Assembly (NCBI GenBank): GCA_964187785.1 | Contig: OZ076412.1 | Span: 53,320,001-53,384,000, forward strand | DNA from: Amphiscolops sp. MND2022 | Taxonomy: Eukaryota | Reading direction: 5' to 3' | DNA length: 64,000 bases | Shown here: positions 1 to 50,499 of the stretch, piece after piece | How positions within the stretch are numbered: the first letter of the stretch is position 1 | Layout: each line of letters begins with the position of its first letter | Program-made: the position numbers and the translations under genes | Notes under the pieces: generated by a model | Told to the model about the DNA's origin: nothing | Database searches by the model: none | What the model saw: the letters and a program-made list of their open reading frames with translations, nothing else

Positions 1-365
1 TCCACAACCTCGAAATCACACTAAGGATCCCCCCTTTTTTCGGAACTATGCGACTTTTTGAAACTTTTTGGATTGAAATTTTTTCCCCAAAGGGTCCCCC
101 CTTCAATTTTTTTTGATGTTTTGCAACACAATGGATGTCAAAAAATCGCAAAGGGTCCCCCCTTTTACATTTTTTGGCACTGTGACACTGTTCAAAAATC
201 TCATTAAAAATTTTTTTTGGGAAATTTTTTCATGTCTCCAAAGGGTCCCCCCTTCAATTTTTTAAATTTTTTTTGCAACCAGCTGGTTTCACAAAGCCCG
301 AAGGGTCCCCTTTTTAAATTTTGAGCCTTAGATATGTCGCCGACTTTGGCCGTTCTCGGCTTGTT
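1..365 (+). repeat. Interspersed repeat family copy (HINE/DINE-like), left-truncated by the window
   Basis: AAGGGTCCCC subrepeats; terminus GAGCCTTAGATATG.CGCCGACTT.GGCCGTT..CGGCTTGTT. Confidence 0.85.
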
Positions 366-2700: not shown

Positions 2701-4149
2701 CTCATTCGGGGGACCATAACTAAGGTCTAAGGAGTAAGATCTAAATAAATTTCGTGATTAAGATCTAAAGAAGTAAATAAGGTCTAAAATGCGAAACGGG
2801 AATAAGATCTAAATAATTTTTCCAATGAAAATACAGTTTTGGGCAAACTTATTGGACATATTTATTTAAGTGACACCGGTAAATCGGTGCTGAATATTAA
2901 TGCATACATGTTTCCTGATGATGCATGCGTTCTATAAAAGCAATCTCCCTCGATTTGCCTATGGGGACCCGAAAATAACTTATGGAAGTCGATTGCATTG
3001 TCAGGGATATTCGAATACGATAACCCCCGACGTTTTCGCATTGTAGCGGACATGGTCGGGAAAGAGTTAACTTTGGGACAGGCGCTTGTATTCTTGATCT
3101 TGTTATCATATATGTCTCTGATTGCCAGAATTGTTCTTTCAGCTTTCCTTTCAATTTCGATTCCATCATTGTTTTTTCAATTTCAGCATATTCTTCAGTA
3201 TGCATATAGTGGAAGCCGCTTAAATGGGACACGCGTATGAGACAATACTCAATGTACTACTTAAAAGTAATATTTCGGTCCTCTGGCCTAGCTGGCCCGG
3301 TCAATTGTACTGCTGATATGAGACAACGAATATGGCGTCCCATATAAGCGGCTTCCATGTGTGAAATTTGAGAATTCAATTGCCGCTGTTCCCGAACAGT
3401 CATTTTTGTGTCTGTGAACACCGCAGATTGATTTTATCCTTATAGACATTACTTTTGGTATAAATGAAGCTATCTCTTACGAAAACCTTTGACCCCTTCC
3501 GTTTGCCCTCAGTTTCCTGCCAACTTGGCATTTTTACCGGAAATACTAGAAACCAAAATTTAGACCTTGGTTACGATTTAGAAGCTGGCATTCTCGAGAT
3601 CTTAGTTACAAAAAATGTCATTTAGATCTTAGTTACAGAAGTGCGTTTCGATCTTATTCCTTAGATGGCAGTTTGTGCCCGCAGTCATTTATAATAGAAA
3701 TCCAGTCATCTCGTTTCAGATTTTAATCAGGTTAAATCACTCTCGAGGCTATCGGCGTTACTCAGCGCTTATGAAAAATGACTAAAGTAGTCTTTTAATG
3801 AAACCCATTTAATGACTAGAGGGAGAATACTAACTCGTAATTCAGGAACACTTCTTTTGTAAGATGTAGGTAAAAAACTTCCTGCGTAGGATCTAAGTAA
3901 TTTATTTTGTGAGGTTCAAATTTTTCATTTCTAAGCAATGGCATTGCTCCGCTCCCGTGTTGTGTGGCAACGAATATGCTATCTTGTCTTTGGAACTATA
4001 CGTAGCCACTAAATGCAATGGAGTGGCCGTTGAATTCATTGATACAAAATTACAAGCAGCAACTAAAGACGTCATTTTCGTGTTTAGGACCAATCATAAA
4101 AATTCACGACAGCCGAACTTACAAAAGTGATTAGAAATTTTCAAAATCT

Positions 4150-13691: not shown

Positions 13692-14087
13692 TTAAAAGCT
13701 AGTGTCTGTTATGCAGCCTTTTGAGGCACTTTGAACAACTCTGGCGAACTTCCGGAGAGACCCATGCTTAGCTTTCAGAGGGGGCTTAACCCATTCGGTT
13801 TTTCGGGCAGCCATTTCTGTCTCTGATACTTCTAAACTTAACAGTTGTTGATCAATGTCAATTGTTACCGTATCTCCATCTTTGACCAAAGCAATGGGAC
13901 CTCCACTGAAAGCTTCTGGAGCAACATGTCCGATAATGAACCCATGGGAGGCTCCGCTGAATCTCCCATCTGTAACCAAGGCACAACTTTTGCTCAGATT
14001 AGCACCTACTAGGGCTCCCGTTGGGTACAGCATTTCTGGCATGCCGTTTTGGGGTCCTTCGTACCGGATCACCACCACCATACCAGC
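13692..14087 (-). CDS. ilvD: ilvD exon 7 ([12 protein letters not shown]...[12 protein letters not shown])
   Basis: TAG acceptor; [18 protein letters not shown]; stop TAA at 13692-13694. Confidence 0.97.
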
Positions 14088-16051
14088 CTACATAAAAAAG
14101 ATTGATGTGAAAACAATGAACTTCGTAATTCCTAAAAATTAGTCAGTCAATGATTGATCCATCTGGGACTGCGTTATTAAGCTACTCACCGGAAAAAAAC
14201 TGAGTTTAAGTCCTCAATTCCTAATATTGCTATTCAAAGTTTTATTTCGAAGAACTTCTGATCTAACACAGAAATTGCTACTATCAGTAGTTTTCTTCTA
14301 GTTCGTATTAAAATTGTTGTTCCAATTAATTTGTTGATGTTTTAATATGTCAACAATTCAAGTCACCAACCTGTATTTTTTTGTGCTGGAAGCTCTCCAA
14401 CATACTTGCTTCGCTGTCAAACACGATAGCCGGACCTTCGAAGTAATGCCCCTCTTTTCCGCTTATTTTGGCAACTGCACCTTCTGGTGCCAGATTTCCG
14501 TGGATGATTTTCAAGTTGGATTTTGGTTTGCGAGGCGCTTTGACTGAGAATATGACGTCTTGATGAAGGTTTTCTAGACTAGGGACATGTTCCAGATTTT
14601 CAGCCAGAGTTTTGCCAGTGACAGTAATACAATGCGCGTTGAGATACCTGTGCAATGTTTAAAACAAGATTCATTCTTGTTCTGAAATTATTTTCATAGT
14701 TTGTACTCGAAAGTTTCAATTGTCACTGTATAACATTGACATTGTTATTTATATTCTTTCGCCAATCTCGCAGAGTAGCTACTTTTTATTTCTTTATTTT
14801 CAAGCACATTCCATCCTCGTGCATCAAAGCTAAAACGTATTCGAAGAGTATTTTAGTCTTTTTGTTTTCCGTCCCCATATTCCAATATTTTAGTCTTTTT
14901 GTTTTCTGTCCCCATATTCCAAAAGTTGGAAAGTAACTAACACAGCCGAGTTTTCTCGTAACTTTGCTATGTTCCATTTTAAACCGAAATGATTCTTCCA
15001 GAAAATTTAACTACCATAAAATTAGGTTCGTAACAGTGTAGTATTAGTGAAGATATTTCAATTTTCCTAGAAAAAAGTGAAAGACAAACAAAAAGACTAA
15101 AATGACCCCAAAATAGCCAAAAAAATCAAACTCAGTTTTTAACTGTTTTATGCAATTTTTGTAGTTTCTGAATATATTTGTGGGCATGAGTTCAACAGAA
15201 CAATCAGCAATTTAGCATACTCTTGTACAGAGAAACCTATAGTTTTTTTTTAAAAAAAAAGGATGATATGGACCAAAAAGTGTCGAAATCTTAACTAGTT
15301 TATAGACTACATTGGAGCCTTAGAAAATGTCGTCGCTAAAAGAGCTTAGAATGGAAAATATTTCGGCGCTCAGTCGAGTCTTGTAAAGAACTTGGATAGA
15401 CAAAAGGGTCTTCGTTCGATACTTCGTTATTTTTCAATAGCTTTAAAGCATAAATTTGCTCCCGGCTTATTATCAATAACTACACTCCACAAATTTATAC
15501 ATTGTTTGTATCGATTTAAAGTAATCGATTTAAATAATAATTTGAATAATAATTAATTTACAATAATTGTCATTATTAGTTTTAATTTGAATTTTTACAC
15601 TGCCCTCGTATATGTGAAATCTATCATTTTATCAAATTTGAGGAAATTCAGTGTCTTTTTTGTTTCAATAGAAACGACTTTTTCACAACTTAAGATCGAG
15701 CGCAAATGTAAATCTTAGTTGAAAACTTCGTCGAGTGTACGTACAGCAGGTAACTTGAAATCTAACGTCCACAACCAGCTTCGTGACCAAACAACATCTG
15801 CCGAAAATTTCAAATTTTTGAAGTAATACCGCACACAAAATGGCCGATTTGGCGGATACCCAAAATCTGTCTAGAAGACGTGCAAGAACGCCCAGACAGA
15901 GAACTGCAACGCCCACCAGCTTGGTGACAAAACAACACCTGCCAGAAATTTGTCAAAAATTCAAAGTACCGCACAAAAGAAATATGGTCGACTTAGCAGG
16001 TACCTAAAATCAGTCTGGAAGACGCATAAGAACACCCACACAGCGACACCT

Positions 16052-16098
<47 letters not shown>

Positions 16099-19000
16099 CA
16101 CAGAGAGACACCCTGAAGAGACAAAGAAGAAATAAGAGAACACATATTCTGTGAACAATACAAAACACTCCGGTGTAGTGCCGTCTCGTCCAGAGAATTC
16201 GCCACAGAATGCGGACACCACCGAATTTTAATGGAAGAAATAGGCAACTTTTGCAATAACTGTTTATCAGGTGAAGACTCGCTGAGACTTCATAAACATC
16301 ATTTCAAAGTGTAACTGATAATTCTCTGTGTATTTGTATTGATTTTCAAGTATTTGGAAATGCATGATCTGCCAGATTCTTTATTTTCATGACATTTACC
16401 AAATACAATGTACTTTCGCGAATTGTGTGTAGGAAGTCACAGGACTTTCAGTGTGCCAGCATCGAGGAGTCTCCTCGACGTTAGAAAAGTCCCCCAAAAG
16501 ACCGTTTATGGGAGAAAAACTGACGTTTAGGGTTGTAGATAGACTACGATCTCCCGTCCAAGCGACCTAAGCATTGTCCCAGTTTTAGTATGTGCTCTTT
16601 TTGCACTGCAGGACGTTACCAAATTTTTTGAATAAAAGTTAGAAAACTTCTTGTCATGACATCATATTTTTGTTTCACGTACCCATTATCTAGCAGGTGT
16701 TTGAGGAAGATGGAGGTGCCTCCTACTGAATGTAGGTCTGGCATGAAATACTTTCCACTGGGCTTCACGTTGCCTATGAAAGGAACTCTGTCGCTGATTG
16801 GCTGGAAATCTTGCATGTCCAGGGGGATTCCACCAGTATATGCAACTGCCAGTATATGTAATACTGCGTTTGTAGAGCCCCCAATGGCGCAAACTGCTGT
16901 GATGGCATTTTCTAAGGACTTCCTAAAACAATGTAACTGTTATGCAGCGCGTTATTTTCATCAAAGAATATTAAACAATAAATAAATTCAGCAAAAAAAA
17001 ATTAAATATCGACTTCACTTATTGTGTCTTCAAGCCTACTGCTGAGACTGTTGAGGACTTCTGGGTTTTTCAATGCTCCTTTTTTGGTTTATTTGAAAAC
17101 AACCATTTTGAATTGAAAAACAGAATGTCCAAATCTTGAACTTGAAAGGTAATTTTCCTGGAACAGCATTAATCTTAGCCCCCACAATAACGCTCAAAAA
17201 CTTAATGCACGACTAGCCGAGTGAACTTAATGCAAAACTTAACCGAGTGATGATATCTGAAGGCTTTATGTTCTTCACCAGCAAGTTTTTCATCGCAGGT
17301 CCTATCCTCGAGCACTCTTTTTCTTTCGCGGGGTCTAACGCGGGGTTTGAGGACCCGTTGGGGAGACACATACCCATAGCTTCAATGGCCACCGCCATTG
17401 TGTTGGCTGTGTACAGACCTGGACAGGATCCAGAACAACTGGAAGAATGCTTTGTAATCTCAATTCTTTCCTCATTCGTGATCTGGCCAGCTATCATTTT
17501 CCCATACAACTCCGAAGCCCCTCCGATATCAACAATTTCACCTGTTGGAAGTTTCATTATTCACGCATAAGATCATTCAATTTGTGACGTGAATCAGAGT
17601 TCTAGGCGTTTCACAATCGAATAAAAAGCACTACTACCTAATTGAGTTAACTGATAGGAGATAAGGAGTTTTTGAGTTTTTCAGTTTTTCCAATCCTGTT
17701 TTTAGTCGGCGCCTTTTCCCTTGAGGAAAAAAGCCCGACTATTACAGTGGGTATTTTTTTCAGCCTACAATCTCACTCTGAATGGTCCACTTTTCTTACA
17801 ATTCTCACAACCTTACAATTTTTACAATTCTTACTTAGCTTACGAAGCAGTATTTTTACATTATCTAAGAAACTCAACGGGGCCAAAGGGTACTCCCTTA
17901 GAGTATCTTCGGCTCTGTGAGACTTTTTTTCGAAATAAAAAATTTTTTACCAAAGGGTTCTCTTCAATTTTTTGATATTTTCTGACAGAATGGATGTTGG
18001 AAACTCCCAAAGGGTCCCCCTTTCAGTTTTTTCGGCATTGTGAGACTTTTTTTCATAAAAGGGTCGCCAATTCACCAATGCTTCGACATTTTGAAATTCT
18101 TTTGCTATTTTTCAGCCTTAGATATGGCGCCGACTTGGGCCGTTCCCGGCTTGTTATGGATTTAACTAAGATATAACCCTGTGATTGTTGGGGACCGAAA
18201 GGAAATAGTTTTTGCTTCGAGAAATGATATCTATATGCAATCAATGTGAAGACAAAATTTCAACCTTTATACTTCTTGACGAGCATAGATCCCCCGTAAA
18301 GAACAATGGAAGGTCGGTCGATCCTCAGTTGGGCAATTAGCACCCCTGGCATGTTTTTGTCGCAATTTGGGATACTGACATTGGCGTCGTAGTGCATGCA
18401 TTCTGTCACTGTCTCAATCGAGTCGGCAATGATCTCTCGGGACAACAGCGAGTACCTCATGCCCTCAGTACCCATCGACATTGCGTCACTAATGCTGATC
18501 GTGTTGAACCTGAAACGCCAGAGAACTGCTGAGGGAAAACTTCATCACTGCTTTTTCCAGGAAGGAAACATTATCATCGCTTTCAAATACGTTTTGAGTA
18601 GATACTTCTACAACAAAGTGGCACGTTTCTAATGAGAGAACCTTAAGCTGAAAGGTCTACTTTCTCCAAAGTAATCGAACTTTCGCTTCATATTTATAGG
18701 GTTTCTTACTCGGTTAGTTTTCACTGAAGTCGACTATAATAGTAGCTTTTGCAATCTGATTCAAGTAACCCAAACGTTTCTGCATTCAAAATACCAAGCC
18801 ATTTGTAAGTTTTTGGTCACTGTGCGAATTGTTTTTTTTTAAAATTTCAATTCACAGGAAAGTTTTTGTCCTCAAACGTTTTAATCAGGGTTTCCCTACA
18901 AGGCCGATGATCATAATCTGACCATATTATGGCACCATACAAATCATACAATTTTACTTACTATGATCTTGCCATGATCGGCCTGGAATCATTTATGGTC

Positions 19001-22000
19001 CAGAGTATGATCGGCCTGGAATCATACTGTGAATACGATGGCAGAGTATTATTGACCTTATTTTGTATGGGAGGGGATCCCGGGATGAATATTTCTGAAT
19101 TGAAACAGATTTTTTGGATTTTTTCGAAAGCAGTTCCTTTACAATTTGGAGTACTTTGCGGTCTTTGAACATCGAGCGCTGCGCCGACTAAGACAGTTAA
19201 CGTTAATTTTACGCGAACTGCAAACATTGGAATGGTTCGTTTTTGAAATCGCGTCACTGTTTGAACAAAAATTTATATTACACTCATCAAAGGGGTTCTT
19301 TTTCATTTATTTGTAATTACAACCAATATTAAATAGGTCCAAAACGTCCCATTCAAAGATTGATTCGGGATTACATTGTGCATGAAATAACATGGCTGCT
19401 TTTTAAAATGTTTTTCCAAACGACGTACTTGTCCCATAATAAAAATTGCCATGTGATATGCTTTTTAATACATTTCTTTTTGTTTTTTTGTCTGCGCTCA
19501 ACCCCTGGTTGTTTTTATCTCTTCAATCAAAGCTCGTTTTTCTGTTTAATCGCCCCACAGGGTACATGCCTCCGGTCTGTGCATGTTGCTTGCGTTTTTA
19601 AGGCTTTTGACCCGGATTGCTGATCCGTGCCAATTGTCATGCTTGTTTTATTATTTTTGTCGAAGTGGTGGCGGTCTGAACCGTTGTTACTGAAAGAGCG
19701 GTTTGGAGTTTATCCTTAGTTTTTCTTAGGAAGCTTTCTTGTAGGCTCTTTCAAAAAAAGTAAAAGGATTGTTGGAGGTTTTTTCCGTACTTACCGCATT
19801 TCAGTAAACAGTTTCTTCGTCTGTGTGTAGGACATCACCCTTCTGTATTTCGGGTCATACGTCGCCGGCTTTAATATGATCAGTTGGTCTGGAATTGTAC
19901 CGGCAGAATTGCGGGTGATCAAAACGGAAAGGTCACTTGAAACGACTTCAGGATAAATTTCTTAGTTCCGGGTGTGTGTCCAAAATGTTATTTAAAAAGT
20001 GTCTGCCTAATTTCTTGAGCGTACTGCAATTCGAACTACATACAATGCACTGTTTAGGTTCTGACGGAAATTTGATGCCTATGCGTCTTTCAGCAGGTAT
20101 GCTTTGTCGTGTTTTGCAAAAATTGGATTGTTCTCTCGATTGTGCCTATGTGTTTTTCGCAGCGCCGTAAATGCGAGTCACATTTTGCTCTTTGCATTTC
20201 TATACTCTTTGATATGAAAGCTTTGCTTTTGTCCAATTTTAGGAATTTTGGCACACTGTATACATATGTATGATCATCTAGAAATGTTATTACGGTAACT
20301 TGGTTGGTGTTTTTGAAATTGTCACCACTGAGCCTGCCGCAACTTTTGTCTTCGGCTTCGAGTATAAAAGGGGACGATGCAATGTTTACTGTGCAAAGTT
20401 CCCCTAGAATCTAATGAAAACGCTTCTCCTGGAAATTCAGATGGATCAATTGTTTTTTTTTCGATTTTTCTATATGAGGGATTTCAAATTTTTAATTCTT
20501 TCCACCATTGAGTTAGGCTGAGCCTGTCTTTGCCTTCTTTCCGATGTCAGCCACACATCCGACATCCAGAATATAGCTGTATCGGTGCACATTTTGTTGT
20601 TGCGTTACATGACGAAAATGTAATGCGTTGAATGCCGGGTAGCATGACCTTTCGAAGACTACAGTTCTGCCGTCTCCAACTTTGATTCAGCGACAGTGTG
20701 TAAGTCTTTTTCCCACTTGTGTATATTCTTCAGCATTTTAGATAAAGTTGTTCTCTTCAAGACAGCATTGTTCCCCAATGATGTCGAGGTTGGAAGCGGC
20801 TTCCTTTAAACAACGTTTCCCATGTCCACCGAAACATCAAGTTCGGCCACCAGTACACAATCTATTTGTCGTTTGCTGATGGCTTGCTGTTAGTGATGGT
20901 TTTCCTTTTTCTCTCTACCGCACGGTCGCTTCCTACACAGTGTACAGCTATCTTCTCAATGAGGTCGTAACGGTAGTCTTAAAATCGGAATGCCCGGATA
21001 CACTGGCGGATCGAGTGTGGTTACCGGTACCTCGTGTGAAGGTTAAACGGTAGATTCGGTTGTCTTGTGGCAAATAATTAGAAGATCCGATGAGGGGTCC
21101 TTCTCTCGATGGGACTTCGTCGTCGAAATGTTTCGCATTTCCGCCCCAGTATGTTTTTTTTTGCATTCTTCTTTCCGCTTTACCTGGAGGTTGGTGTGTT
21201 TCTGGTTGCATGTCTAAGTTCTTTTTGGCATCAGGGTCTACCGAATTTTGTCGCTTGTGCCACTGGGTCCGCATAATGCCGGGTTTGCTAATCGTAGACA
21301 TCGTCCTTCGCTTCTGGTGAAATGTCTTTTCTTTTTTGAATGGCCTTGATTGAATTTTTCGCTTCCCAGTGGCGTTTCAAACCTTTTTTCTATGCAAACA
21401 TTTTTTTTGTAGTTGTTGTCATTGTTTTCAATCATTAGATTATCTCGTGTATGGTCATCATTCGCAGACTTGGTCTGCGTTGAACTGGATTGTGAACAAG
21501 TGTGGTATTGTTTGGTTGGTAGCAGCTCGTATCAGTTTGCTTACCGTCTTATCTGTGTTCGTGCGTTCTGATTGGTTAAAATCCTAATCAATGCGGCTGT
21601 TTACCGTTGCACCCTCGGCGGAAGTGTTGATGAGGAATTGCTTCCGGTTTTGGTTTTTCAGTGTCTTTACAGTTATTGAAATGGGAAATTTATTTTCTCT
21701 TCCGGCAGTGTACTTCAGGGCACTGTGGAAATAAGGTAATCAGTCTAGTGACAGTTTTATACGGGCGCTGGTTTGTTTGTTCGTCCTGTTTTTCTTCGAT
21801 TGTTGTTCAAGCTTGGTGTTAGGAAAATAGAAGGACTTGTTTACCGTTTAAGTGAAATCTGAAAAGTTTGAGTTGCCGTAGTCCCTAAATTACGGCCAGT
21901 AGTTCTGTTTCGCAGGCAGAGTTTTTTCCCCTCTGCATCGTTTAAACAGCTGACAATCGCAACTCGTTTAAAGTCCCCGTTCCCTTATTTCTGCCATAGT

Positions 22001-23362
22001 GCTATTAAAAGTTCGGTGTTGCAGGAGTTTGTTGTTCTTTGTTGCTGTTGTATTGTTTTGTTGTTAGTTCTCTTTTCATGTTGTTGAAGTCGGAGATTCT
22101 TCTTGTTTCCTATTTTGTTTGTTTCGAGCAACAATTGTCTCCGTTTTTCAGTCGGCGTTTTTCCAGAGAAAAGTGTCGACTGTAGTCATGACTTTTCGTC
22201 AGTGTTTTTTTAACTTTAAAATTTCTTTTACAATACAACTGAAGTGACGTGAAGTGAAGTTCTACCCCAAAAATTATACAAGTATTTAAGAAGCCGCCAA
22301 ATTGTACCCGTTGGCTCAAGGAACTGAACCAAAAAAAGTTTCCCGCGTAACATACAATACCGGACGAGACCAAAGGGTCCCCCTTTTAGGTTTTTTGGCA
22401 TTGTGAAGCTTTTTCATTTTTTTTCGTAAAAGGGTCCCCAATTCACCAATAGTTTGACATTTTGAAGTCCTTTTGCTGTTTTGGAGCCATAGATATGGCG
22501 CCAACTTGGGGCGGTCCCCGCTTGTTTCTTATAGGTTTGGGATGAACTTGCGGAACATTTGATTGCGCCGAGGAACGATTTTGGGGTCTTCGTATTTATT
22601 GGTGGTTCTAGTTTGTTGCTTCATATGATTTATTTTTGTTTAGACTTATTCCGTTCTGCGAGATTGTATGCCCTGACCATATTGTTTCTTTTGATATAAC
22701 TTTGATATCTGTTTGCTGGATTTAAATCCCTGGTTTTCTAATTTCGTACCCAGGTTGGGTCGATATCGTTTTTCGATAGTTCTCTGATTATCTGGTTTGT
22801 GATGTTTTGTCACTAGGCTGTTGGACGTTACAAAGTGTGATATTTGAGCTTTTTAATGGGAAAATATGTTTTCACTGACCTGAGTCCTTTGAGCCCTGCT
22901 TTGTCTACGCTGACTTTGACCCAGCTGGCCAATTGATCCAAGTGATTGTTGCAAGGATTGCCTTCGATCCAGCAGCTGGAGATACCCACGAACGGCCTCC
23001 TCATGTCCTAGCATAAATAATTCAATAACATTTGAGAGACCTTTATAGGGAAAAATTTTTATTGAGACAAAAAAAATTTGAAAATTAATCAAACAAGAAC
23101 TTCAAGCAAACATTTTTTGCAAGAAAAGTTTCGGAACTTGAAATGCATGAACAAGTTTCGAATATCCATCGAAGTTTTGTACAAATCTCATCAAAAATTC
23201 CATTGCAATTGTTTTTTTTTGTTTTGAACAACTTGCCTGCTCCGTCATGCCTATGCCGTACAGAAACGACTGACTCATGTTCTGCTTGGGATCCTCGGTC
23301 AACTTCCGACTGTGGGGTCGACACTCCGCGGGAAACTCTCCCATATCTTCTATGTCCGCCAT
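13692..23362 (-). CDS. ilvD: Dihydroxy-acid dehydratase (IlvD/Edd family), 7 exons, 569 aa: complement(join(13692..14087,14371..14647,16683..16922,17244..17541,18265..18509,22880..23007,23237..23362))
   Basis: Exon lengths 126+128+245+298+240+277+396=1710 nt. Splice phases 0,2,1,2,2,0 join without stops. Family motifs: EGNPCN (Fe-S Cys), [82 protein letters not shown] (catalytic Ser), GHVAPEA. All acceptors are AG; donors are GT except intron 1 (GC). Confidence 0.97.
14371..14647 (-). CDS. ilvD: ilvD exon 6 ([18 protein letters not shown]...KKIQ)
   Basis: CAG acceptor, CAG|GTTGGT donor; [17 protein letters not shown] motif. Confidence 0.96.
16054..16096. repeat. (AG)n microsatellite in ilvD intron 5
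   Basis: About 21 consecutive AG units. Confidence 0.97.
16683..16922 (-). CDS. ilvD: ilvD exon 5 ([22 protein letters not shown]...LLDNG)
   Basis: TTTTAG acceptor, GG|GTACGT donor; GGSTNAVLH and KPSGKY motifs. Confidence 0.96.
17244..17541 (-). CDS. ilvD: ilvD exon 4 (EIVDIGG...[12 protein letters not shown]...DIITR)
   Basis: CAG acceptor, CG|GTTAAG donor; overlaps ORF 17213..17557. Confidence 0.96.
17695..18155 (+). repeat. HINE-like repeat copy in ilvD intron 3
   Basis: Begins TTTTTAGTCGGCGCC, ends GGCGCCGACTTGGGCCGTTCCCGGCTTGTT. Confidence 0.9.
18265..18509 (-). CDS. ilvD: ilvD exon 3 ([13 protein letters not shown]...CDKNMPG...KYKG)
   Basis: TTTCAG acceptor, G|GTTGAA donor; overlaps ORF 18260..18481. 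Confidence 0.96.
19650..22200 (-). mobile_element. Degenerate Ty3/Gypsy pol fragment (RNase H to integrase) inside ilvD intron 2
   Basis: Minus-strand remnants resembling DYL-S, (W)LPGI...C..C, L-DFAG and PK-CIRTD, plus an RNaseH-IN spacer similar to that of the 29-35 kb provirus. No LTRs found. Confidence 0.65.
22310..22526 (+). repeat. Truncated HINE-like repeat copy in ilvD intron 2
   Basis: AAAGGGTCCCC subrepeats and AGATATGGCGCC..CTTGTT end. Confidence 0.85.
22880..23007 (-). CDS. ilvD: ilvD exon 2 ([23 protein letters not shown]...GLR)
   Basis: Acceptor TAG, donor AG|GTCAGT; contains NPCN. Not shown in this frame in the supplied ORF track; translated by hand. Confidence 0.95.
23237..23362 (-). 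CDS. ilvD: ilvD exon 1 ([10 protein letters not shown]...[10 protein letters not shown])
   Basis: ATG at 23362. [23 protein letters not shown] matches the DHAD N-terminal 'SR.IT.D..Q.ASQAMLY..G' region. Donor is CAG|GCAAGT. Confidence 0.9.
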
Positions 23363-25816
23363 GACGTCACAAATGCAAGCTCAAATAACCTGCAATTACG
23401 TCATCAAATTATTCAATAACGTTCTAAGTTTGTTATGACCCTTTTGCTTTAACACTTCAAAGACCAAGAATCTCAGATATCACATGATGAATCAAGTTTC
23501 TGGACAGAAATAAACCACGCTAAAAAATTTTATGGCTTGTTCGATTCGTTTTTGATATATTTTTCCAACAAAATCGTAATACGATTTAATAACAAAGATA
23601 GGTTTTGAAACTAATTGATTTCGGAAGTCCGAGTGAATGCATACCATTGTACATGAAGGCCTCGAATATAAATCTGGTTTTTAACCGGCCAACCAACACT
23701 GATTAAAATTTACCAAAGCAAAACTAGGCAACTCGGTTTGAGCCTCTTACTAACTTAGTAAGAGGCTCAAAACATGTTGAACATTTTGGTTATCACGGGA
23801 AAACCTAGCTATGGAAAGAAGTGTTTTAATTTTTTTCATTTGAACTGTTTCTTGTGGATTAAAAAAAAACAAAAAAACTTGACACTATGCTGACTTCTAC
23901 AGATTGGTGTGATGTGAAAAGGAATCAAATAATTCGAGAAATTTTTCGAAGAAGAACAACTTTTGAATCTCACATGCACGAAATTCAGTGCTATTAACAG
24001 TTTTAAGATATTTGTAATTATAATTTTAGAATTGAAATAAAATAAATTAATAAATGTAATTAATAATGGCAATCAATAAGCTGAAAAGTGCTTTTCGTTT
24101 TTTGCTGAGAAATTTTTTATCAACTTGTAATGAGAGTATAAAGGGAAAACTTCATTGCATTCACAGCATAAAGTGACGTCACAGTTAGAAAATCTAGGAA
24201 TCTATGGACATGGTATAATTAATAAAGTTAGACAAACGTGACTACTGGGCGTGTAGAAGAGGGAAAACTGGAAAGGAAATTGAAGTAGTCGTATGAATTG
24301 GCTAGTGAAATATTCAAGTGCACAACTTAAGCGTCTACTTTTATTGCGCTGGTTATTGGACCATGGTAGAAGCTGAATGTGCTAAAAGTCTCGTTCTTTA
24401 TTATAACGACTAAACCCAATCGGATATAATTATTAAATAATTGCCACTTACCTACCAAATCTACGGAACTAGAATACTGTATTGTTTTGAGCTATTGTGG
24501 AATCTCCCTACTTATAACATTGCAAACCCACAAGTACAAATGTAACTATTGTCAAAAATGATCACATAATGATATTAGCATGAGTTTATTCCAGATTTTG
24601 GTGGCACGTTGACTCATAGTGTAAACTGTAGTTTTTTGAAAAAATTGGCTAAAATGTGCAGTTTTTAATTTATATAACATTATTTACAGCTTAAACAGTA
24701 TACACATAATGCAAACCAAAAAAATATAAAACTATTCTCGAGATGATGATTGAATATGGGGGAACTATTTTGGAGTTTCCAATTAGTTTTGGTAAGTAAG
24801 AGTATATTCGACACACTGTGGTCGCACTTAAACGTGAATCTCGTGTCTTGGTTTTGAAAAATAGCTATTTTCCAGATGACATGGTCCAACATCTTTTTTG
24901 ATCATCTTATTCATTGAAAGACTAGAGAGTAATTTGTGAAGGATCTTAACAAGCGATCCGGACCAATAACGATGGGAAATTGTGCAAAACTATGCCTGTC
25001 ATTATGTGTTTCAATGGAGTTTGCAAAAAGTTTGACGTGAAAAAACGAGAAGCGCAATGTCCTTGAAGTTTTTCTGCTTGGCTGGAGAAAAGAAACGAGA
25101 TCGATTGTGAAGTTTGTGGACAAGGTAGTGAGAATGAACCGTCCAATGTGAGCTTTGCTGTCTGGAAATATTGTAAAAGTCGATCATTTTTTACCACGGA
25201 ATGCGATGACTTATAACAGCGAAACAGTTCTCCAAAAATTGGACAAGAAAACAAGAGGTTCGCGTAATAATAGTTTGCCATTGTTATAATCTAATATTCT
25301 ACGGTTAAAACAGATCTTTGTTTTAAGACTTTAACTCGATTCTCTTCAAGTATCTATTTCTATCTTCGTTACAAAACAACAATGATTTCAAGCACAATAA
25401 CAATAAGTGACAATAATTAGAGTTTTGTTGGTATACAAGACCAAGTCTCTCTGTCTAAGTCCGTATGTTACGGTATGAACTGAATCTACGGTAGAGGTCA
25501 TGATGACGGCATGTCACAGCCATCATAGGAGAAACGTGATATAATTGAAAAATGGCTTTCGCGCATTGGAAGTTCCCGGAGTTTTGGTAAAGTATTTGAT
25601 AGTTTTTGTGAAAACTCACTTGGAAGTACAATGGAAACAACGTAAATTGTGATGAGAGCAGCGCCAAAATATACCGTGTTCTGCTTATTATAACCCTTCC
25701 GATAATAAGACACTCGTTAATTTTGACGGCTTGCTGAAAACAACTATCCAAATATAAGCAGTGTAAAAATTTATATTGTATTGCAATATATTGCAATTAA
25801 ATACAATTAAAATATT

Positions 25817-29392: not shown

Positions 29393-32300
29393 ATCTAATG
29401 GACACCCACTGAGACCCGAATACTTCGGTACAACCGGCCCAACCGGCCGTGAATCAAACGATAATAAACCAGACAACAGCAGACCGAATGGAGAAGAACA
29501 AATACAAAATCCCGATTTTATCGGACAGAGAAACTGATTCGACAAAAATAAACCCACGAATGTGGTGGGAACAAATTTCCGAGTACATACATCTCACGTA
29601 CAATCGGAATTTAGATGAAATGATGGACCAAGGCACCGTTCAAATGGACCCACATACCGTGTATCACATCAAGGGAGATGTTATTTGGGCAATAGGTCCC
29701 AAAGCCCAACACGAAATTATGAGAGGTCAATGGGGAAGAGAGCTGAAAGACGTTGACTTATCAGAACTATTGAAACTATTCAAGAAAACATTCATACCCG
29801 CGAGAAATGTTTTTCACAGTCGAGCCCAATTCTTTAACATCAAACAGTAGGACAACGAAACATTAGATGAATACTGGAAAAGACTTGTCGACATCGAAAG
29901 AAAATGCGAATTCAACAAAATCACACCAGAAGACATTATAAGGTACCAATTCGCAGCAACCAACAAGGACAAAAAAGCCCGAGACAAATTCATAAAAGGG
30001 CAAGTAAAACTCCAAATGGTCCTTGACACCATCGAACAGGACAATTACAATCGCAAATACGGAGACAAGTAGCCGAACAAAAAACACAGAAAACCTCCAT
30101 CCGATAGCTCGTCAAGCGAAAAACAAGTCGCTTACACACACCCAGCACGGAAACGAAAGACAACTGAAACGGGGAAGAAGAAGCTATCGAGCCGTAACTG
30201 CTACATTTGCGGTAAACCAACATGGTCATTGGAACACATCTGCCCAGCACGGCGAGCACAATGCAATAACTGCAAGAAAATGGGACATTTTGCCAAAGTG
30301 GGCAAATCCAAGACCGTCAGTCGGATCCAGAAGGAACCAAAACGGACAGTAACACTGAATCATGGCCAGAAGTCGACCACATTCAATCCGTCAACAGCAT
30401 CAACCGTATAGACTTCTACAATGCGATACTATTGGTCCTGGGACAGCCAATAGAATTCAATATTGACACTGTCTCTCCGATAATTAGTCCAATAGAAGTA
30501 TAAAAAACCACAAAAAGCTTTGTAGATGTAAACAAAAACCCGATAAAATTCCAAGGTGAGGCCATGGTGTAAGTGAAAACGGAAAGAAGCAAAGAAGTCC
30601 TACCCATATTAATTACTGAAAACAAAAACACCCAACCCTTGCTGGGGTTGGACTGGGTGGACAAACTGGAAATTGGATTACAAGGAAACAAGAACACGAA
30701 TATTATCCGACATATCGAAACCGACGAAAGACGACAGAAGATCATAAACGAATACGAAGACTTATTCAAAAACAATCACACAATCAAAGATCTGACAATT
30801 GACATCCAACTGAAAAAAGGTACAAAACCAAAACAACAAAAGGGGCGACCAGTACCAATACATTTTCAAAAAACGGTCAAACACGATTTGAAAAGATGAT
30901 TGAAAAAAGACACCTAGAGAAAGCGGACAAACCACGGAAAATTGTTTTATCACCATCAAAAAGGATAAATCCGTGAAAATAGCACTTGATTCAAGAAAGC
31001 TAAACGAAGCATGTGTCAAGAGAATAGCGGCAATGGCAAACATGGAAGAACTAATTAGTAAAATATTGGCAGAAATTACAAAAATAACGGAGAAATTTGG
31101 ATGACAAAGATTGACTTGGATTACGCTTTTGGGCAGGCAAAACTATCCAAAGAAGCAGCAAAACACTACGTGTTCTCGGTAATGGGACGAGACTTCACGC
31201 ACCACTACCGATTTAAGAAAGTCTTTTATGGGCTTTCGGATATCCCAACTGTATTTCAAGTACATATGGACAAAGTGCTGGAATATAAAACACCAGTCTG
31301 GCTAGATGACATCATTTGTGTAACCAACGGAACAATTGACGAACCCGAAAAAGAAGCACGCGAAGTACTCAACAAGTTACAAAACGCTGGATACAGAGCA
31401 AGCGAAAAGAAAACCGAACTCTTCAAATAAGAACTAACTTGGTTGGGTTACCACATAAATCAAAGCGGAGTAAAGCCGATAAAAGGCAAGACAGAAGCAA
31501 TAACGAAGCAATTGAGTGCCCCAAAGAGTGACAAAGAACTCAAATCCTTCTTGGGTTCGGTACAACATTTGTCAAAATTCATAAACAACTTGTCCAAGAA
31601 GACCGACAGAATGAGAAATTTATTGAAGAAAGAAACTCGTTGGGAGTGGACACCCGAAATAGATGAAGACTTCGAGAATTGGAAGAAAGAGATAACAGAA
31701 TCGCCATGCCTTGCCCACTTCGACCCAAAGAAAGATAACTACGTGACGACAGACGCTTGCAATACGGGCCTCGAGGCAACACTCTGGCAAAAAGAAGGAG
31801 AAATTTTCAGACCAGTCGCATTCGCTAGTAAATTCGTCACTGATTGTGAGAGGAAATAAGCTAATAATGAACTAGAACTACTAGCAGCGTTATGGGGGTT
31901 AGAGTATTCCAGATACTACGTATACGAAAAGAAAATTAACTTGTTAACCGATCATCAAGCACTCCAACCGTTGTTAAAGAGAAAGAGGGCGCAAGAGCAG
32001 TATAGTGCTAGGCTAACACGGTAGTTAGATAGATTGAGCCACTTCGATGTAAACATACAGTATACTGCTGGAAAAATTATTCCGCTGACGGATTACTTAA
32101 GCCGACATCCGATCATAAAAACCGCTGAGAACGGAACGGAAAATGACGTAAGCGGTCAAACCGAAACGGAATCCGAAGAAGAATTCGTGATGAATCAAAT
32201 ACACAGCTTATTCCATTTTATTCAAATGAACGGAAGCATAAAGAGATTCACGAAACGAATCAAACCGAGACCAAAAATTGACCAACCGTCTGATATACGC

Positions 32301-34810
32301 AAGCGTGAACAGAACAAACAAAATCATTCGCTCGAAGCCTCAGTACCATTGAACGGTGTTAATCCAACATCGATAAGACTTTTAAATCGCAATCAATCCG
32401 CACCAGAAACTAAAATGGACAAAGTCAACGGCATCGATTTGCAATTTATTTACAAAAAGAGAGGCCACTCCCCGGAAACCTACCGACTCTGGACGGAGAG
32501 AAAAAACTCCTAAAGCAGGAAAAGACGAGAATAGTCGGAAAAGGAAGCGACCATGAACTATTACAAGAAAATCGGCCCCCACAGCAAGCACGAAAACGGA
32601 TAGTGGAACTAAACATCCAAATATACAATCGCTTCTTCCACTAATGTGAAACCTTGGGAACAACACCGCTGAAAGAATAGCAACAAAATAATCACGAGTC
32701 ATGGATCATTCAAAACTCATCGGACAATGAGAGTCAAGTGAGCAACATTCGACAAAAGAAAAAATGCCCCACCAACGCACTCAAGAAACTCCGCAAGCGT
32801 GAAACGTCAACCTATTTAGACTAAAACAGACGGTCAAAACAATCACAATGGACGACGAACAGAATGAATACACAGAGGAAACCATCAAAAGATCAGAGAA
32901 AGATTTCGATCTCGACCTACCGATGCTCGTGGACGAGACGGCGAAGGACGTAAAGATTTTGGGCGCCATCGCTGCCCTCGAAAAGCATCAGCCCGAAGAC
33001 ATATTCTACCCGTATCGTCCACATAGAAGTCATCTAACCACCAGATTCGGTCTTCTCTTCTACAACGACAAGATCATTATACCCGAAAATATGCGGACAA
33101 CAAACATTGCCATGCTCCATCAAGGACACCCGTCTGCGACCACAAGGGATCAATTAGCGACAGCGTTCTGGTGGCCCGGCATTTACCAAGAAATCCGAGA
33201 GAAGGCAAAAAACTGCCTTAGTTGCAGAGCCTAAGGTAAGAATCTTGTAACACAATTACCGTCCACTGAGAAAAGCAAGCTAGAAACTTTGTCCGAGCCA
33301 AACCAAGAAACTCAATTGGATTTCGCTGGTCCAATAAAATCAAAGACTCGCGGCGACGTGTATATTTTGATGGCCGTCGACCGATTTAATAAATGGCCAA
33401 GGGCTCAAATTTGTGAAAGTACCGATTCACTAACAGTTTTAAAATTTTTAACGAGTTTTTGTTCAGATAACGGAAGGCCACGGAGTATACGTACCGACAA
33501 CGATAGTTGTCTTAAAAGTAACGAATTCAAGGAATTTTGTAACCGAGAAAATATAAAACGCATTAGATGCACATCAAATTTGCACACCGGTACCGGCCAA
33601 GTGGAAAGAACCGTACGAACAATTAAGTCACTAACTAGAGCAAAAATGGCAGATGGCTTAATATTCGAATAGAGTGTTAACTTAGCAATTAAAACAATCA
33701 GACACATTCCCAACAGTAAATTGAACATGACGCCGTTCCAGATGTTTTTCGGACGAAAACCTCGCACGGCGATAACTAATATAAATAGACAACCTGATCG
33801 TATCTTAGCTAATTGGAGAAAGACACAGACCAATTACATTTCAGCACAACCAACGGATCTTCAGATGTTCACCATAGACGATTCAGAAGAAGAAATGGCT
33901 GATTACATTCGATTCGGCTGATACAATACCGAACGCATTGAAATGCAGATTCAAAACTAATAAATTACTAACGGCAGTAAAAGAAACTAAACATACTATA
34001 ACTACACCTCACCTGAAGGGAAAACAATACACAAAAAACTAGCGTCAAAACCGTAAAAATTTCAGCTTTCAAAAAAACCGGATGAAAATCGGAAACCAAC
34101 TAACAGAAGTCGCAGATGTGGGAAATTCTGCCAAAGAGAATTCTGTGACACACATAAAGGAGTGTATGGAACTCCAAAAAGCCCGCAAGAACCGTGTAGT
34201 AGTTACACCCTACCGACAATGCCGCAGAAACGATCCACATATGATGACATTACCACAACTCACAGAGAAACGGACGCTCACGAACCACAAGCCGCTACAA
34301 CAGCGGACGAACAGCACGAAGAACAAAATCACACCGTAGAAGAACCACAACCAAAAGAAGACAACGCATCCGAAGCAAATACACCGCTGCCTACCACACT
34401 GATCCAATGTAGATCAGCCACGGTCCGCGTCCGTCCCAGAGGGGAGACGACCAACAGACCACTCCGATACGCGCAACCGTTATCGCTGAAGGATCGTCGG
34501 AAACGGAAAAGCAAACAGAGAAAAAGGTAAAACTAACGTTAAAGAGACAAAGCTGGAAAATAATAAAGTAACTTTGAACAATCAAGTGATCTTCGTAGAT
34601 CAGTTAGGATAAAGGGCGCTAGACGCACCGAGAAACTAGGAGGGGTAGAGTATTTCTAATATTGGTCGTTTAGGAACCATCTCCAGCCCACTTCGAAGAT
34701 TCCTTACAACTCCCTTTCCGAGACTGAAGAAAGAGGGCACACAAACAGGAAAAACTGCCAAGAAACCCTCCGGAAGTGAGGACTGGTTTCCCTAACTGCA
34801 GAAGGGGGAA

Positions 34811-36366: not shown

Positions 36367-37536
36367 TCAATATTTAGTAAGAGCTCCTCGGCTTTTGATT
36401 ACTTCTGCTATTCTGTCTGGCATTGACATGAATAATTTCTCGCAATATTCGGGTGTTGTAACACTCTCCCATGCTAATGAAAAATTTTCTTACGAGATCG
36501 TCTTGTCCGGGAGCTTTTGCCCGTTTTCCGCTTCAGAATAAACCATGCTTTTCTATGGGGTTGATATCCGGACTGTTTCCTGGCCAATCCAATACCTGAA
36601 TATTTTCCTCCCGAAAAATCAGGAAACTACTCGCTCTATGACAAGGAGCATTGTCATGCGAAAATATATCAGCATGATGTTGTAACATTATGAAGCCTCT
36701 CCCGCAATAAACGCTCATCTATTTCTCTATTTACATGTACCCCAGTATCGTAAATTTTCAATTGACTACCACCATTTCTGCTGATACAGCCTCATATCAT
36801 ACTAAAAATTGGATGCTTGACGGCTTTTCAATACATATGGTTGCCGGTATCTTGTACCTGGCGGTCTCCGAACAAATACCCATTGGTAAAACTGACGTAT
36901 CATGGTTTCATCGGACAAGAGAACTTTTGCCCAATCTTCCAAGGAAAAAGCCGCGTACCGTTTTGAAAATTCCAGCCTCCTGTGACGCATAGATTTGGTT
37001 AAAAGTGGTTTTCTGGCTGCTCGATATCCATTTGGGTTGAATTTCTCACATAGGAGTCGTCGAATATGCCCAGCGGAATAAATTATCCCGTATGATTCAA
37101 AGTCCTTTTTAAAGTCACGGGAAGATGCAAATGGATCACGTTCATTTTTTTGAAGCAAAATGTGCAGAGTTCGTTCAGAATAACTTGATTTCTTTTGGAA
37201 TGTTCCTCTGGGTTTCTTGAGACCCGATAATCATTTTTTATCCATATTTTGCAACGAGAAGTGGCTGAAATGTTCAATACTTGGGCAATTTTTCGGTATG
37301 AAAAACCAAGTTTGATAAGCATTATTACTTTCTCTTTAATCTCTAAAGAATGGTCTTTTCTGCGCCCCATTTAGTGAATGTATGTTGGAACGATAATGTA
37401 TGTTCAATTCTAAATGATTTGATAACGTTTTCAATGTTTTTGAAAACCGGATGTGACGTGTTGAAGCAAAATGTGTGAATAAACCTTTCCTATAACACGA
37501 AAATTGTTAATTTTCGTAATCATGCGTTCACCACTG
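36367..37536 (-). mobile_element. Tc1-family DNA transposon, frameshifted transposase pseudogene; one end (TA|CAGTGGTGAA at 37536) visible
   Basis: HTH MGRRKDHSLEIKEKVI..GFSYRKIAQ, RKPLLT, SDET, HDNAPCH, WPGNSPDINPIE, C-terminal SMPDRIAEVIKSRGALTKY*. The matching TIR was not found. Confidence 0.93.
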
Positions 37537-46129: not shown

Positions 46130-46300
46130 AGAGTTTGCCGAAAGCGGCACATAATTATGCCCATGGCTTTCCCATGAGAATACTCGGTGGCACGTCTTCG
46201 CAAAATCCATTCATATCTTGTAACTTCTTCTTCACGTTGATGCAGCAACCAATGTGAATTGTGCAGTTTTTTAATGCATAAAAACCAAAGACTGATGGAC
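46130..46300 (-). pseudogene. GIY-YIG/SLX1-like nuclease remnant at the polyprotein C-terminus
   Basis: SVFGFYALKNCTIHIGCCINVKKKLQDMNG...KPWA*LCAAFG parallels VY.L......YIG.T.N...RL..HN.G....PW.L....GF. YIG>HIG and R>K; internal TAA. Confidence 0.55.
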
Positions 46301-46399
46301 ACGTGTCTTCCGGCATCACTTGGCGACAAATTGGATAAATGTTTTGAGAGATGGGGAACTGTACGATGCTTGTTGTGTCGGTTCTGCCTGCGAGGTTTT

Positions 46400-50293: not shown

Positions 50294-50499
50294 ATTTGAC
50301 GAAAGGGAGATCGAATAAATGCCAGTAGCACTCGATGATGCATAGATGTTCGGTTTGGAAAGCTTCTTTTCGTTGATTATCGATATCATTTTCCTGTCTA
50401 TGCTGCGCTGCTGAATTTTTGCTGTTCTCCATCTCGCCAACTGAAACTCTAAGTTGGTTTTGCTCGCTCCCAGCCGTCAGCAAGGCTCGAACTTTTTCC

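What the first reader, a model, noticed from the sequence alone, without database searches (positions are those of the whole stretch)
13692..23362. Intact, intron-containing dihydroxy-acid dehydratase (branched-chain amino acid pathway) in an apparently animal genome
Seen: an uninterrupted 569-codon spliced ORF keeps all three Fe-S cysteines (NPCN, CDKN, GSC), the SD and PEM Mg-ligand positions and the DGRFSG serine, even though two introns carry TE debris. This implies purifying selection. Established: DHAD is the third step of Val/Leu/Ile synthesis and is absent from human, fly and worm, which need these amino acids in the diet. Inference: either a rare ancestral retention or an old, domesticated horizontal transfer (six spliceosomal introns). 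That the host is an animal is inferred only from the TE repertoire and intron style.
Basis: partly seen in the sequence, partly recalled or inferred. Interest (0 to 1): 0.8.

Follow-up and report, generated by a model that had tools for sequence, protein, structure and literature searches.

The report
Intact spliced DHAD gene, unidentified eukaryote
The window holds an intact, intron-split gene for dihydroxy-acid dehydratase, an enzyme of valine/isoleucine synthesis that animals normally lack; it sits in the chromosome of a transposon-rich eukaryote that is probably, but not demonstrably, an animal, so the striking reading (an animal with this enzyme) is still unproven.

Summary
On the minus strand, 23362-13692, seven exons join into a 569-codon ORF. 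There are six introns: five GT-AG and one GC-AG. The exons cover both IlvD/EDD Pfam domains collinearly, and every exon matches the true DHAD models best. All eight catalytic residues are kept, including the Cys that marks [2Fe-2S] enzymes.

A second haplotype contig (98.2% identical) also keeps exons 3-7 open. It has 4 substitutions in 1456 exon bases (3 synonymous) against 41 plus indels in 3362 intron bases. This indicates purifying selection.

The protein is an orphan long branch. Nothing among about 15 billion proteins, GTDB genomes or JGI metagenomes exceeds 57% identity over the full length, or 65% in the best exon. ML places it beside fungal DHADs (92/58), but AU tests do not reject Bacteroidota or plant-type placements. 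None of its intron positions is shared with four other eukaryotic DHAD genes. Its origin is unresolved.

The host is not identified. The contig comes from an ENA metagenome assembly. The next gene is ACF1/BAZ1A-like (WAC-DDT-WSD-PHD), which points to an opisthokont and probably an animal. No RNA evidence was available. Foreign DHAD in bdelloid rotifers is a precedent.

The parts
23237..23362 (-). DHAD exon 1 (ATG at 23362; codons 1-42). Acidic N-terminus with no targeting-peptide character. Followed by a GC-AG intron.
   Evidence: net charge -4 over the first 17 residues; in-frame TGA 21 nt upstream of the ATG
22880..23007 (-). DHAD exon 2. Holds Cys61 (NPCN), the Cys found only in [2Fe-2S] DHADs.
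   Evidence: PMC9543379
18265..18509 (-). DHAD exon 3. Holds Asp93 and Cys134-Asp135-Lys136.
17244..17541 (-). DHAD exon 4. Holds Cys206.
16683..16922 (-). DHAD exon 5.
14371..14647 (-). DHAD exon 6. The one non-synonymous haplotype difference, H351D, is at 14634.
13692..14087 (-). DHAD exon 7 with stop codon. Holds Glu456 and Ser482. A lineage-specific 2-residue deletion lies just before the PEM motif.
18510..22879 (-). Intron 2 (4370 nt). Carries a copy of the short dispersed repeat at 22370-22526.
17542..18264 (-). Intron 3 (723 nt). Carries a copy of the same dispersed repeat at 17884-18155.
14648..16682 (-). Intron 5 (2035 nt) with an (AG)21 microsatellite at 16054-16095.
3835..3953 (-). 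First coding exon of the neighbouring host gene (ACF1/BAZ1A-like: WAC-DDT-WHIM1-WSD-PHD). It lies about 9.7 kb downstream of the DHAD stop on the same strand. The rest of the gene lies beyond the left end of the window.

Best explanation
This is a resident nuclear gene of a diploid, transposon-rich eukaryote. It encodes a [2Fe-2S]-type dihydroxy-acid dehydratase (IlvD/ILV3 type).

Shown: the gene is intact in two haplotypes and is split by six spliceosomal introns whose composition matches the surrounding genome. It is physically linked to an ordinary chromatin-remodeller gene and is under purifying selection.

Inferred: the protein binds a 2Fe-2S cluster through Cys61, Cys134 and Cys206. It binds Mg2+ through Asp93, Asp135, carboxylated Lys136 and Glu456. 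Ser482 serves as the base to dehydrate 2,3-dihydroxy acids to 2-keto acids. As modelled it has no organellar targeting peptide, so it would act in the cytosol.

The protein is a fast-evolving orphan lineage that joined this genome long ago. Its best, though weak, placement is beside fungal (opisthokont-type) DHADs. The host is most likely an opisthokont, and I put the chance that it is an animal at roughly 60%. If it is an animal, the gene is best read as an old, domesticated transfer, of the kind known from bdelloid rotifers. If it is a unicellular relative or other protist, the gene is an ordinary pathway enzyme.
For: Gene model and domains.

DHAD subfamily: every exon scores best against TIGR00110/NF002068. 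The summed scores are about 582 and 613 bits, against 342 or less for any other IlvD/EDD subfamily. The best solved relatives are plant, cyanobacterial and mycobacterial DHADs at E 1e-40 to 1e-43, against 1e-13 for sugar-acid dehydratases. An ad hoc DHAD HMM gives 804 bits, within the range of named DHADs.

Catalytic residues are all kept (definitions from PMC9543379).

Selection.

Genomic residence: a 1.41-Mb contig plus a 98.2%-identical haplotig both carry the gene with its introns. Intron GC is 0.376 against 0.38 for the window. The ACF1-like neighbour lies on the same contig.

Orphan status.

Tree: the window protein is sister to fungi at 92/58, and at 97/57 with Exidia alone. Shared states with fungi are NPCNN, HYD, SDA and SGAS.

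Precedent: PMC3499245.
Against: There is no expression evidence.

A relative's transcriptome (SRR19327882) holds the neighbouring gene at 85-91% nucleotide identity. No DHAD from it appeared in the protein searches.

The host was never identified.

The window protein differs at 10 of 114 near-invariant DHAD columns and lacks two residues next to the Mg-ligand Glu. Its substrate or activity may therefore differ.

The summed NCBIfam scores fall slightly under the curated whole-protein cut-offs (618 and 644).

The fungal affinity is not significant: AU p = 0.42 for Bacteroidota and 0.21 for the plant type. Long-branch attraction is also possible.

KARI and acetolactate synthase were not looked for, because no tool searches this genome.
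Confidence: 0.6

Rival explanations
1. The host is a non-animal eukaryote, for example an ichthyosporean, a filasterean, an acanthoecid choanoflagellate, a large-genome early-diverging fungus or another protist. Such organisms make their own branched-chain amino acids. On this reading the gene is a routine, vertically inherited pathway enzyme and the finding is ordinary.
For: The source is a metagenome assembly, not a named animal genome. ML puts the protein beside fungal DHADs, as expected for an opisthokont-type gene. Teretosporea, Capsaspora and Acanthoecida keep essential amino-acid pathways (PMC12923814). The Helitron Rep protein has no relatives outside its own assembly, which suggests a poorly sampled lineage. 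The DDT domain of the neighbour scores below the Pfam cut-off, so that protein is divergent. CpG o/e is about 0.9-1.0.
Against: The terminal branch is very long (1.7 against a median of 0.3), which is unusual for a housekeeping DHAD. The N-terminus is acidic and has no mitochondrial presequence. No EukProt holozoan or other DHAD is closer than 57%. Gene density is very low and introns are long, with two host genes in about 100 kb explored; this looks more like an animal-sized genome. From memory only, the neighbour's WAC domain looks about 60% identical to human BAZ1A (untested).
Confidence: 0.35
2. The gene was transferred anciently from a bacterium (for example Bacteroidota) into this eukaryote. 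It then gained all six introns and evolved fast.
For: None of the six intron positions is shared with three plant-type eukaryotic DHAD genes or with the 18-intron Exidia gene. There is no targeting peptide. The AU test does not reject a clade with Bacteroidota (p = 0.42). The loop between YGG and YG has the same length as in Chitinophaga and shares YKG-EI with it.
Against: No bacterial sequence is closer than 57% among GTDB species genomes, JGI metagenomes or 15 billion proteins. ML prefers fungi, and a 96/87 branch separates the window protein from Bacteroidota. Several residues shared with fungi are rare in bacteria.
Confidence: 0.25
3. The protein is no longer a DHAD of amino-acid synthesis. 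It would be a neofunctionalised paralogue, for example a dehydratase of another hydroxy acid or a resistance-type copy. This would explain the fast evolution.
For: Ten of 114 near-invariant columns are changed, mostly Gly/Pro positions near the cluster-binding loop (PGCDK to PNCDK; CPGxGxCGG to SCSGSCPG). A 2-residue deletion precedes the PEM motif. The terminal branch is long. A cytosolic location is predicted.
Against: All metal and catalytic ligands are kept. Every exon scores far better against DHAD than against sugar-acid or 6-phosphogluconate dehydratase models. Named DHADs from Nitrospirota and others deviate as much.
Confidence: 0.2
4. The gene is an assembly artefact or contamination: a microbial gene wrongly joined to host DNA.
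For: The source is a metagenome assembly. Read-level checks could not be run.
Against: The gene has six spliceosomal introns with host-like composition. Two independent haplotype contigs carry the same exon-intron structure and flanks. Four runs each hold 97-100% of the sampled words across exons and introns. The dispersed host repeat lies inside introns 2 and 3.
Confidence: 0.02

Closest known systems
Fungal ILV3 / plant and cyanobacterial [2Fe-2S] dihydroxy-acid dehydratases (e.g. Arabidopsis DHAD, PDB 5ZE4; M. tuberculosis IlvD, 6OVT)
   Same: The two-domain IlvD/EDD architecture is the same, and all three Cys ligands, four Mg ligands and the catalytic Ser are kept. The best profile and PDB matches are to these enzymes. 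ML places the window protein as sister to the fungal sequences.
   Different: Identity is only 47-57%. The terminal branch is very long. Ten near-invariant positions are changed and two residues are deleted before PEM. There is no mitochondrial or plastid presequence. No intron position is shared with them.
Foreign (horizontally acquired) KARI and DHAD transcripts of bdelloid rotifers (Adineta ricciae; PMC3499245)
   Same: If the host is an animal, both are DHAD genes in a lineage whose relatives lack the pathway.
   Different: The genome context here (long TE-bearing introns, very low gene density, 38% GC) does not resemble what I recall of compact bdelloid genomes (from memory, not tested). 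No rotifer sequence was available for comparison. No KARI partner and no expression are shown here.
Bacterial IlvD of the Bacillus/Bacteroidota/Planctomycetota type (TIGR00110, NF002068)
   Same: These are the best-scoring curated models for every exon. Full-length identity to many of them is 54-57%.
   Different: The window gene is interrupted by six introns. Its summed model scores fall just under the curated cut-offs. It does not nest in any sampled bacterial group.
Sugar-acid dehydratases and 6-phosphogluconate dehydratase of the IlvD/EDD family (L-arabinonate dehydratase 5J84, YjhG/YagF, Edd)
   Same: They share the same fold family and the same metal-site layout.
   Different: Scores are much weaker (E about 1e-13 in PDB; summed NCBIfam bits 342 or less, against 582-613 for DHAD models).

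Membership tests
IlvD/EDD dehydratase family (Pfam PF00920 + PF24877) | N-terminal and C-terminal domains both present, complete and collinear | tested here: met
   Exons 2-5 cover ILVD_EDD_N positions 1-308 of 316. Exons 6-7 cover ILV_EDD_C positions 1-191 of 191. Each exon scores above the gathering score.
Dihydroxy-acid dehydratase subfamily (NCBIfam TIGR00110 ilvD / NF002068) | Whole-protein score above the curated cut-off (618 / 644 bits), and this model is the best among IlvD/EDD subfamilies | tested here: inconclusive
   The spliced protein could not be handed to the tool. Exon scores sum to about 582 (TIGR00110) and 613 (NF002068) bits, slightly under the cut-offs. Every exon nevertheless scores best on these models, and other subfamilies sum to 342 or less. 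An ad hoc HMM gives 804 bits, rank 194 of 200, above several named DHADs.
[2Fe-2S]-type DHAD | Three Cys ligands, including the Cys (At Cys66) that is absent from [4Fe-4S] enzymes | tested here: met
   Cys61, Cys134 and Cys206 are present in the conserved columns. The definition is from PMC9543379.
DHAD active site | Mg2+ ligands (At Asp98, Asp140, Lys141, Glu463) and the catalytic Ser489 | tested here: met
   Asp93, Asp135, Lys136, Glu456 and Ser482 are present. A 2-residue deletion lies 3-4 residues before Glu456.
DHAD enzyme | Dehydrates 2,3-dihydroxyisovalerate or 2,3-dihydroxymethylvalerate | not testable with these tools
   Needs an enzyme assay or complementation.
Branched-chain amino-acid pathway | Acetolactate synthase, KARI and BCAT encoded in the same genome | not tested
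   No tool searches the rest of this genome. None of these genes lies in the roughly 100 kb explored.
Horizontally acquired gene in an animal (bdelloid-like case) | The host is a metazoan | tested here: inconclusive
   The neighbour is WAC-DDT-WHIM1-WSD-PHD, i.e. ACF1/BAZ1A-like. TE types are uninformative. Organism names are coded.
Horizontally acquired gene in an animal (bdelloid-like case) | Integrated in host DNA: introns, host flanks, host-like composition | tested here: met
   There are six introns, two haplotype contigs, a host repeat inside the introns and a linked host gene.
Horizontally acquired gene in an animal (bdelloid-like case) | Nests phylogenetically within a donor group | tested here: not met
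   The protein is sister to fungi at only 92/58. The AU test rejects neither Bacteroidota (p = 0.42) nor the plant type (p = 0.21).
Opisthokont mitochondrial ILV3 | N-terminal mitochondrial presequence | tested here: not met
   The first 17 residues have net charge -4. An in-frame stop lies 21 nt upstream of the ATG. An alternative upstream exon cannot be excluded without RNA data.

The most novel reading that the evidence does not exclude
The host is an animal that keeps a functional cytosolic dihydroxy-acid dehydratase. Together with a KARI and an acetolactate synthase elsewhere in its genome, it would make valine and isoleucine itself. That would be a second, independent animal exception to branched-chain amino-acid auxotrophy, after bdelloid rotifers.
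Probability: 0.2. Interest if true: 0.8.

Novelty: new member of a known kind. Interest (0 to 1): 0.5.

Why it matters
Animals are held to have lost the nine essential amino-acid pathways at or before their origin. ILV3 is reported absent even from two choanoflagellates (PMC4339202). An animal with a selectively maintained DHAD would be a natural counterpart to the engineered valine prototrophy in CHO cells (PMC9560156). It would also make testable how such a pathway is re-housed in the cytosol. If the host proves to be a protist or fungus, the finding is routine. Even then it adds an unusually divergent DHAD lineage, with a changed cluster loop, that may interest enzymologists and herbicide or drug-target work.

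Tried and rejected
- Host identification by TE proteins failed. The Helitron Rep search returned only two hits, both from the same assembly. ESM Atlas neighbours of the integrase, Tc1 HTH and WSD pieces were spread over oomycetes, arthropods, chordates, fungi and plants.
- Rfam found no RNA family in the window. There are no telomere-type repeats.
- Walking along the contig used 12 look-ups. It found only TEs plus the ACF1-like gene.
- The last cluster look-up gave a relative's transcript (SRR19327882), but no tool names its organism. Paper searches for the accession found nothing.
- The WAC domain folded poorly (pLDDT 40), so no fold search was run. PDB holds no WAC-DDT match.
- Intron-position sharing was tested against three eukaryotic DHAD loci and against Exidia. 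There was no exact match. Two near misses (offsets of 4 nt and about 1-2 codons) were not counted.
- Sequence 'signatures' shared with fungi (SDA, SGAS) also occur in some bacteria and plants, so they are only weak support.
- Contamination or chimera was rejected.
- Pseudogene status was rejected.
- The spliced protein could not be passed to the search or fold tools as one sequence. I used exon references and scaffolded alignments A1 and A3, whose fragment placement was imperfect.
Full report
**The thing itself.** The open segments on the minus strand between 23380 and 13692 can be joined at canonical splice sites into one reading frame. The exons are 23362-23237, 23007-22880, 18509-18265, 17541-17244, 16922-16683, 14647-14371 and 14087-13692. 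Together they are 1710 nt, giving 569 codons plus TAA. Five introns are GT-AG. Intron 1 must use a GC donor (CAG|GCAAGT) to stay in frame. Intron lengths are 229, 4370, 723, 321, 2035 and 282 nt. An in-frame TGA 21 nt upstream, with no AG between it and the ATG, fixes the start of this first exon. An acceptor-like CCCCACAG just before codon 18 leaves room for an alternative upstream exon. CDS GC is 0.485 (GC3 0.53). Introns are 0.376, the same as the window at 0.38.

**Family.** Exons 2-5 cover Pfam ILVD_EDD_N positions 1-308 in order, and exons 6-7 cover ILV_EDD_C positions 1-191.
- In NCBIfam every exon scores best on the true DHAD models (TIGR00110 ilvD, NF002068). The exon scores add up to about 582 and 613 bits. 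The E. coli-type DHAD, PRK06131, L-arabinonate dehydratase, YjhG/YagF and Edd models add up to 342 or less. These sums lie a little under the curated whole-protein cut-offs (618 and 644). I could not score the spliced protein as one sequence with that tool.
- Against solved structures, exon 7 matches plant, cyanobacterial and other DHADs at E about 1e-40 to 1e-43 and M. tuberculosis DHAD at 5e-30. Sugar-acid and 6-phosphogluconate dehydratases reach only 1e-13 to 1e-18.
- An HMM I built from 199 DHADs scores the spliced protein at 804 bits. That is below the fungal DHADs (858-868) but above named DHADs from Nitrospirota and others.

**Catalytic residues.** The residues that define the enzyme are given in PMC9543379. 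They are three Cys ligands (At Cys66, Cys139, Cys211), Mg ligands (Asp98, Asp140, carboxy-Lys141, Glu463) and the catalytic Ser489. All are present here, as Cys61, Cys134, Cys206, Asp93, Asp135, Lys136, Glu456 and Ser482. Cys61 marks the oxygen-tolerant [2Fe-2S] class.

**Divergence.** The protein differs from the consensus at 10 of 114 columns that are at least 98% conserved in 199 other DHADs. Fungal, algal and Bacteroidota sequences differ at 0-4 such columns, and distant named DHADs at 8-12. The changes include PGCDK to PNCDK and CPGxGxCGG to SCSGSCPG. There is also a unique 2-residue deletion in the KGGPGMPEM loop.

**Selection and residence in the genome.**
- The window is identical to part of a 1.41-Mb contig (ctg185927_125x_l) of ENA metagenome assembly ERZ25074608. 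A 26.6-kb contig of the same assembly (ctg161789_99x_l) is a 98.2%-identical second haplotype covering window 19416-3470.
- Over exons 3-7 the two haplotypes differ at 4 of 1456 bases (3 synonymous, 1 H351D) with no indel. Over the introns between these exons (3-6) they differ at 41 of 3362 bases plus 24 indel columns (Fisher p = 0.0009). Both alleles are therefore open and constrained.
- Four sequencing runs each hold 97-100% of the sampled words across exons and introns.
- A short dispersed repeat of this genome sits in introns 2 and 3. It also occurs at 87-314 and 39619 in the window and in other loci.
- Contamination or chimerism is therefore not credible.
Expression is untested.

**Relatives.** The gene has no close relative anywhere I could search.
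- Exon 7 against 1.84 billion cluster representatives gave at most 61% identity.
- The exon-7 ORF against 5.8 billion clusters found itself, and then at most 65%.
- GTDB species genomes and JGI metagenome contigs gave at most 64%. The lineage-specific peptide patterns hit nothing.
- A profile made of the window exons on a fungal scaffold (A3) returned no window-like full-length protein.
- Over the full length, the best identities are 54-57%, to many Planctomycetota and Gammaproteobacteria DHADs and to plant-type eukaryotic DHADs. Identity is 50% to Chitinophaga and 47% to Wallemia.

**Phylogeny.** I built an ML tree under LG+C20+F+G4 (PMSF) with 42 rows.
- It puts the window protein beside the fungal DHADs (Exidia and Wallemia) with 92/58 support. 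Its terminal branch is 1.7, against a median of 0.3.
- A 98/96 branch separates the pair from the large bacterial plus plant-type clade. A 96/87 branch separates it from Bacteroidota.
- Without Wallemia it still pairs with Exidia at 97/57.
- Several states are shared with fungi: NPCNN, HYD instead of WYD, SDA, SGAS and an AR near the C-terminus. Some of these recur elsewhere.
- AU tests do not reject a clade with Bacteroidota (p = 0.42) or with plants and green algae (p = 0.21).

**Intron positions.** I compared intron positions with three eukaryotic DHAD genes that I modelled from fetched contigs (L004, L086, L087) and with the 18-intron Exidia gene (L172). None of the six positions is shared exactly. 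Two are near misses.

The origin is therefore old and unresolved. An opisthokont-type origin is the best guess, and ancient bacterial transfer is not excluded.

**Host.**
- The window is otherwise TE-rich. It holds Ty3/Gypsy pieces (29.4-34.5 kb), a Tc1/mariner fragment (36.8-37.2 kb) and a Helitron cluster (46-54.7 kb). None of these is diagnostic.
- Downstream of DHAD on the same strand lies a gene whose first coding exon is at 3953-3835. Its further exons lie beyond the window and encode WAC, DDT, WSD and PHD domains.
- A 1274-residue ORF from a 4-kb Logan transcript contig of run SRR19327882 belongs to the same 90% cluster. It shows the full WAC-DDT-WHIM1-WSD-PHD order of ACF1/BAZ1A. It is 85-91% identical in nucleotides to the genome, so it comes from a related species.
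- This architecture is that of the Itc1/ACF1/BAZ1A family (bioRxiv 10.1101/2025.04.27.650761, abstract). Together with the PHD finger it points to an opisthokont, more like animal ACF1 than fungal Itc1.
- From memory only, the WAC domain looks about 60% identical to human BAZ1A. I could not test this: PDB has no match and the fold was poor.
- Gene density is very low, with two host genes in about 100 kb. Introns are long, and heterozygosity is 1-2%. These features fit an animal-sized genome. CpG o/e is about 0.9-1.0.
- I put the chance of an animal host at about 60%.

**What is known.**
- ILV3 and the other branched-chain genes are reported absent from animals and from two choanoflagellates (PMC4339202).
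- Acanthoecid choanoflagellates, Teretosporea and Capsaspora keep largely complete essential amino-acid pathways (PMC12923814).
- Bdelloid rotifers express foreign KARI and DHAD (PMC3499245).
- So a DHAD in a unicellular holozoan is routine. In an animal it would be a rare but not first case.

**Verdict.** It is a divergent member of the [2Fe-2S] DHAD group, probably cytosolic. Whether it is remarkable depends on the host's identity and on the presence of KARI and acetolactate synthase.

Noticed in passing
window 3835-3953 (-), continuing beyond the left end (L085 11651-12179, 15936-16160; L088 10570-12207): An ACF1/BAZ1A-like chromatin-remodeller gene (WAC-DDT-WHIM1-WSD-PHD) lies 9.7 kb downstream of DHAD. 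A 1274-aa transcript ORF from a related species is in Logan run SRR19327882 (85-91% nucleotide identity). It is the best handle on the host's identity.
   Followed up: partly
window 46100-54750 (-): A Helitron cluster carries a Helitron_like_N Rep ORF (50617-51753) and a tandem duplication of a roughly 1.4-kb unit. The unit gives two nearly identical 202-aa ORFs (47761-48369 and 49174-49782). Further copies lie on other contigs of the same assembly (L089). No relatives were found outside that assembly.
   Followed up: partly
window 29400-34600 (+) and L090 17510-20099: Ty3/Gypsy-type LTR retrotransposon remains (RT_RNaseH_2, rve), broken by stops in the window. A copy with a 1681-aa pol ORF lies further along the contig.
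   Followed up: no
window 36805-37230 (-): A Tc1/mariner transposase fragment (HTH_Tnp_Tc3_2).
   Followed up: no
window 87-314, 17884-18155, 22370-22526, 39619-39635; also L085 11257-11562 and L088 about 18700-18950: A short dispersed repeat with core AAAGGGGGACCCTTTGG has 7 copies in the window against 0.04 expected. It is MITE/SINE-like and of unknown family.
   Followed up: partly
window 23362-23369 (-): A perfect CRE-like palindrome TGACGTCA overlaps the first base of the DHAD start codon. It may be a promoter-proximal element or chance.
   Followed up: no
DHAD CDS versus window: CpG o/e is 0.65 in the DHAD coding sequence but 0.9-1.0 in the window and other loci. RSCU correlation with the neighbouring gene's large exon is weak (r = 0.21), and GC3 is 0.53 against 0.40.
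   Followed up: no
L003 (ENA ERZ23499533 scaffold_372): The closest partial bacterial hit (P0003) sits in a complete ilvE-ilvD-ilvB-ilvN-ilvC-ilvA operon on a contig with a T9SS-tailed protein, so it is Bacteroidota-like. Its ilvD is called short, at 354 aa.
   Followed up: no
L086, L087 (unidentified compact eukaryotes): Their plant-type DHAD genes have introns 4 nt and about 1-2 codons away from window introns 6 and 3. These are near coincidences at two sites. They may reflect favoured insertion sites rather than shared ancestry.
   Followed up: partly
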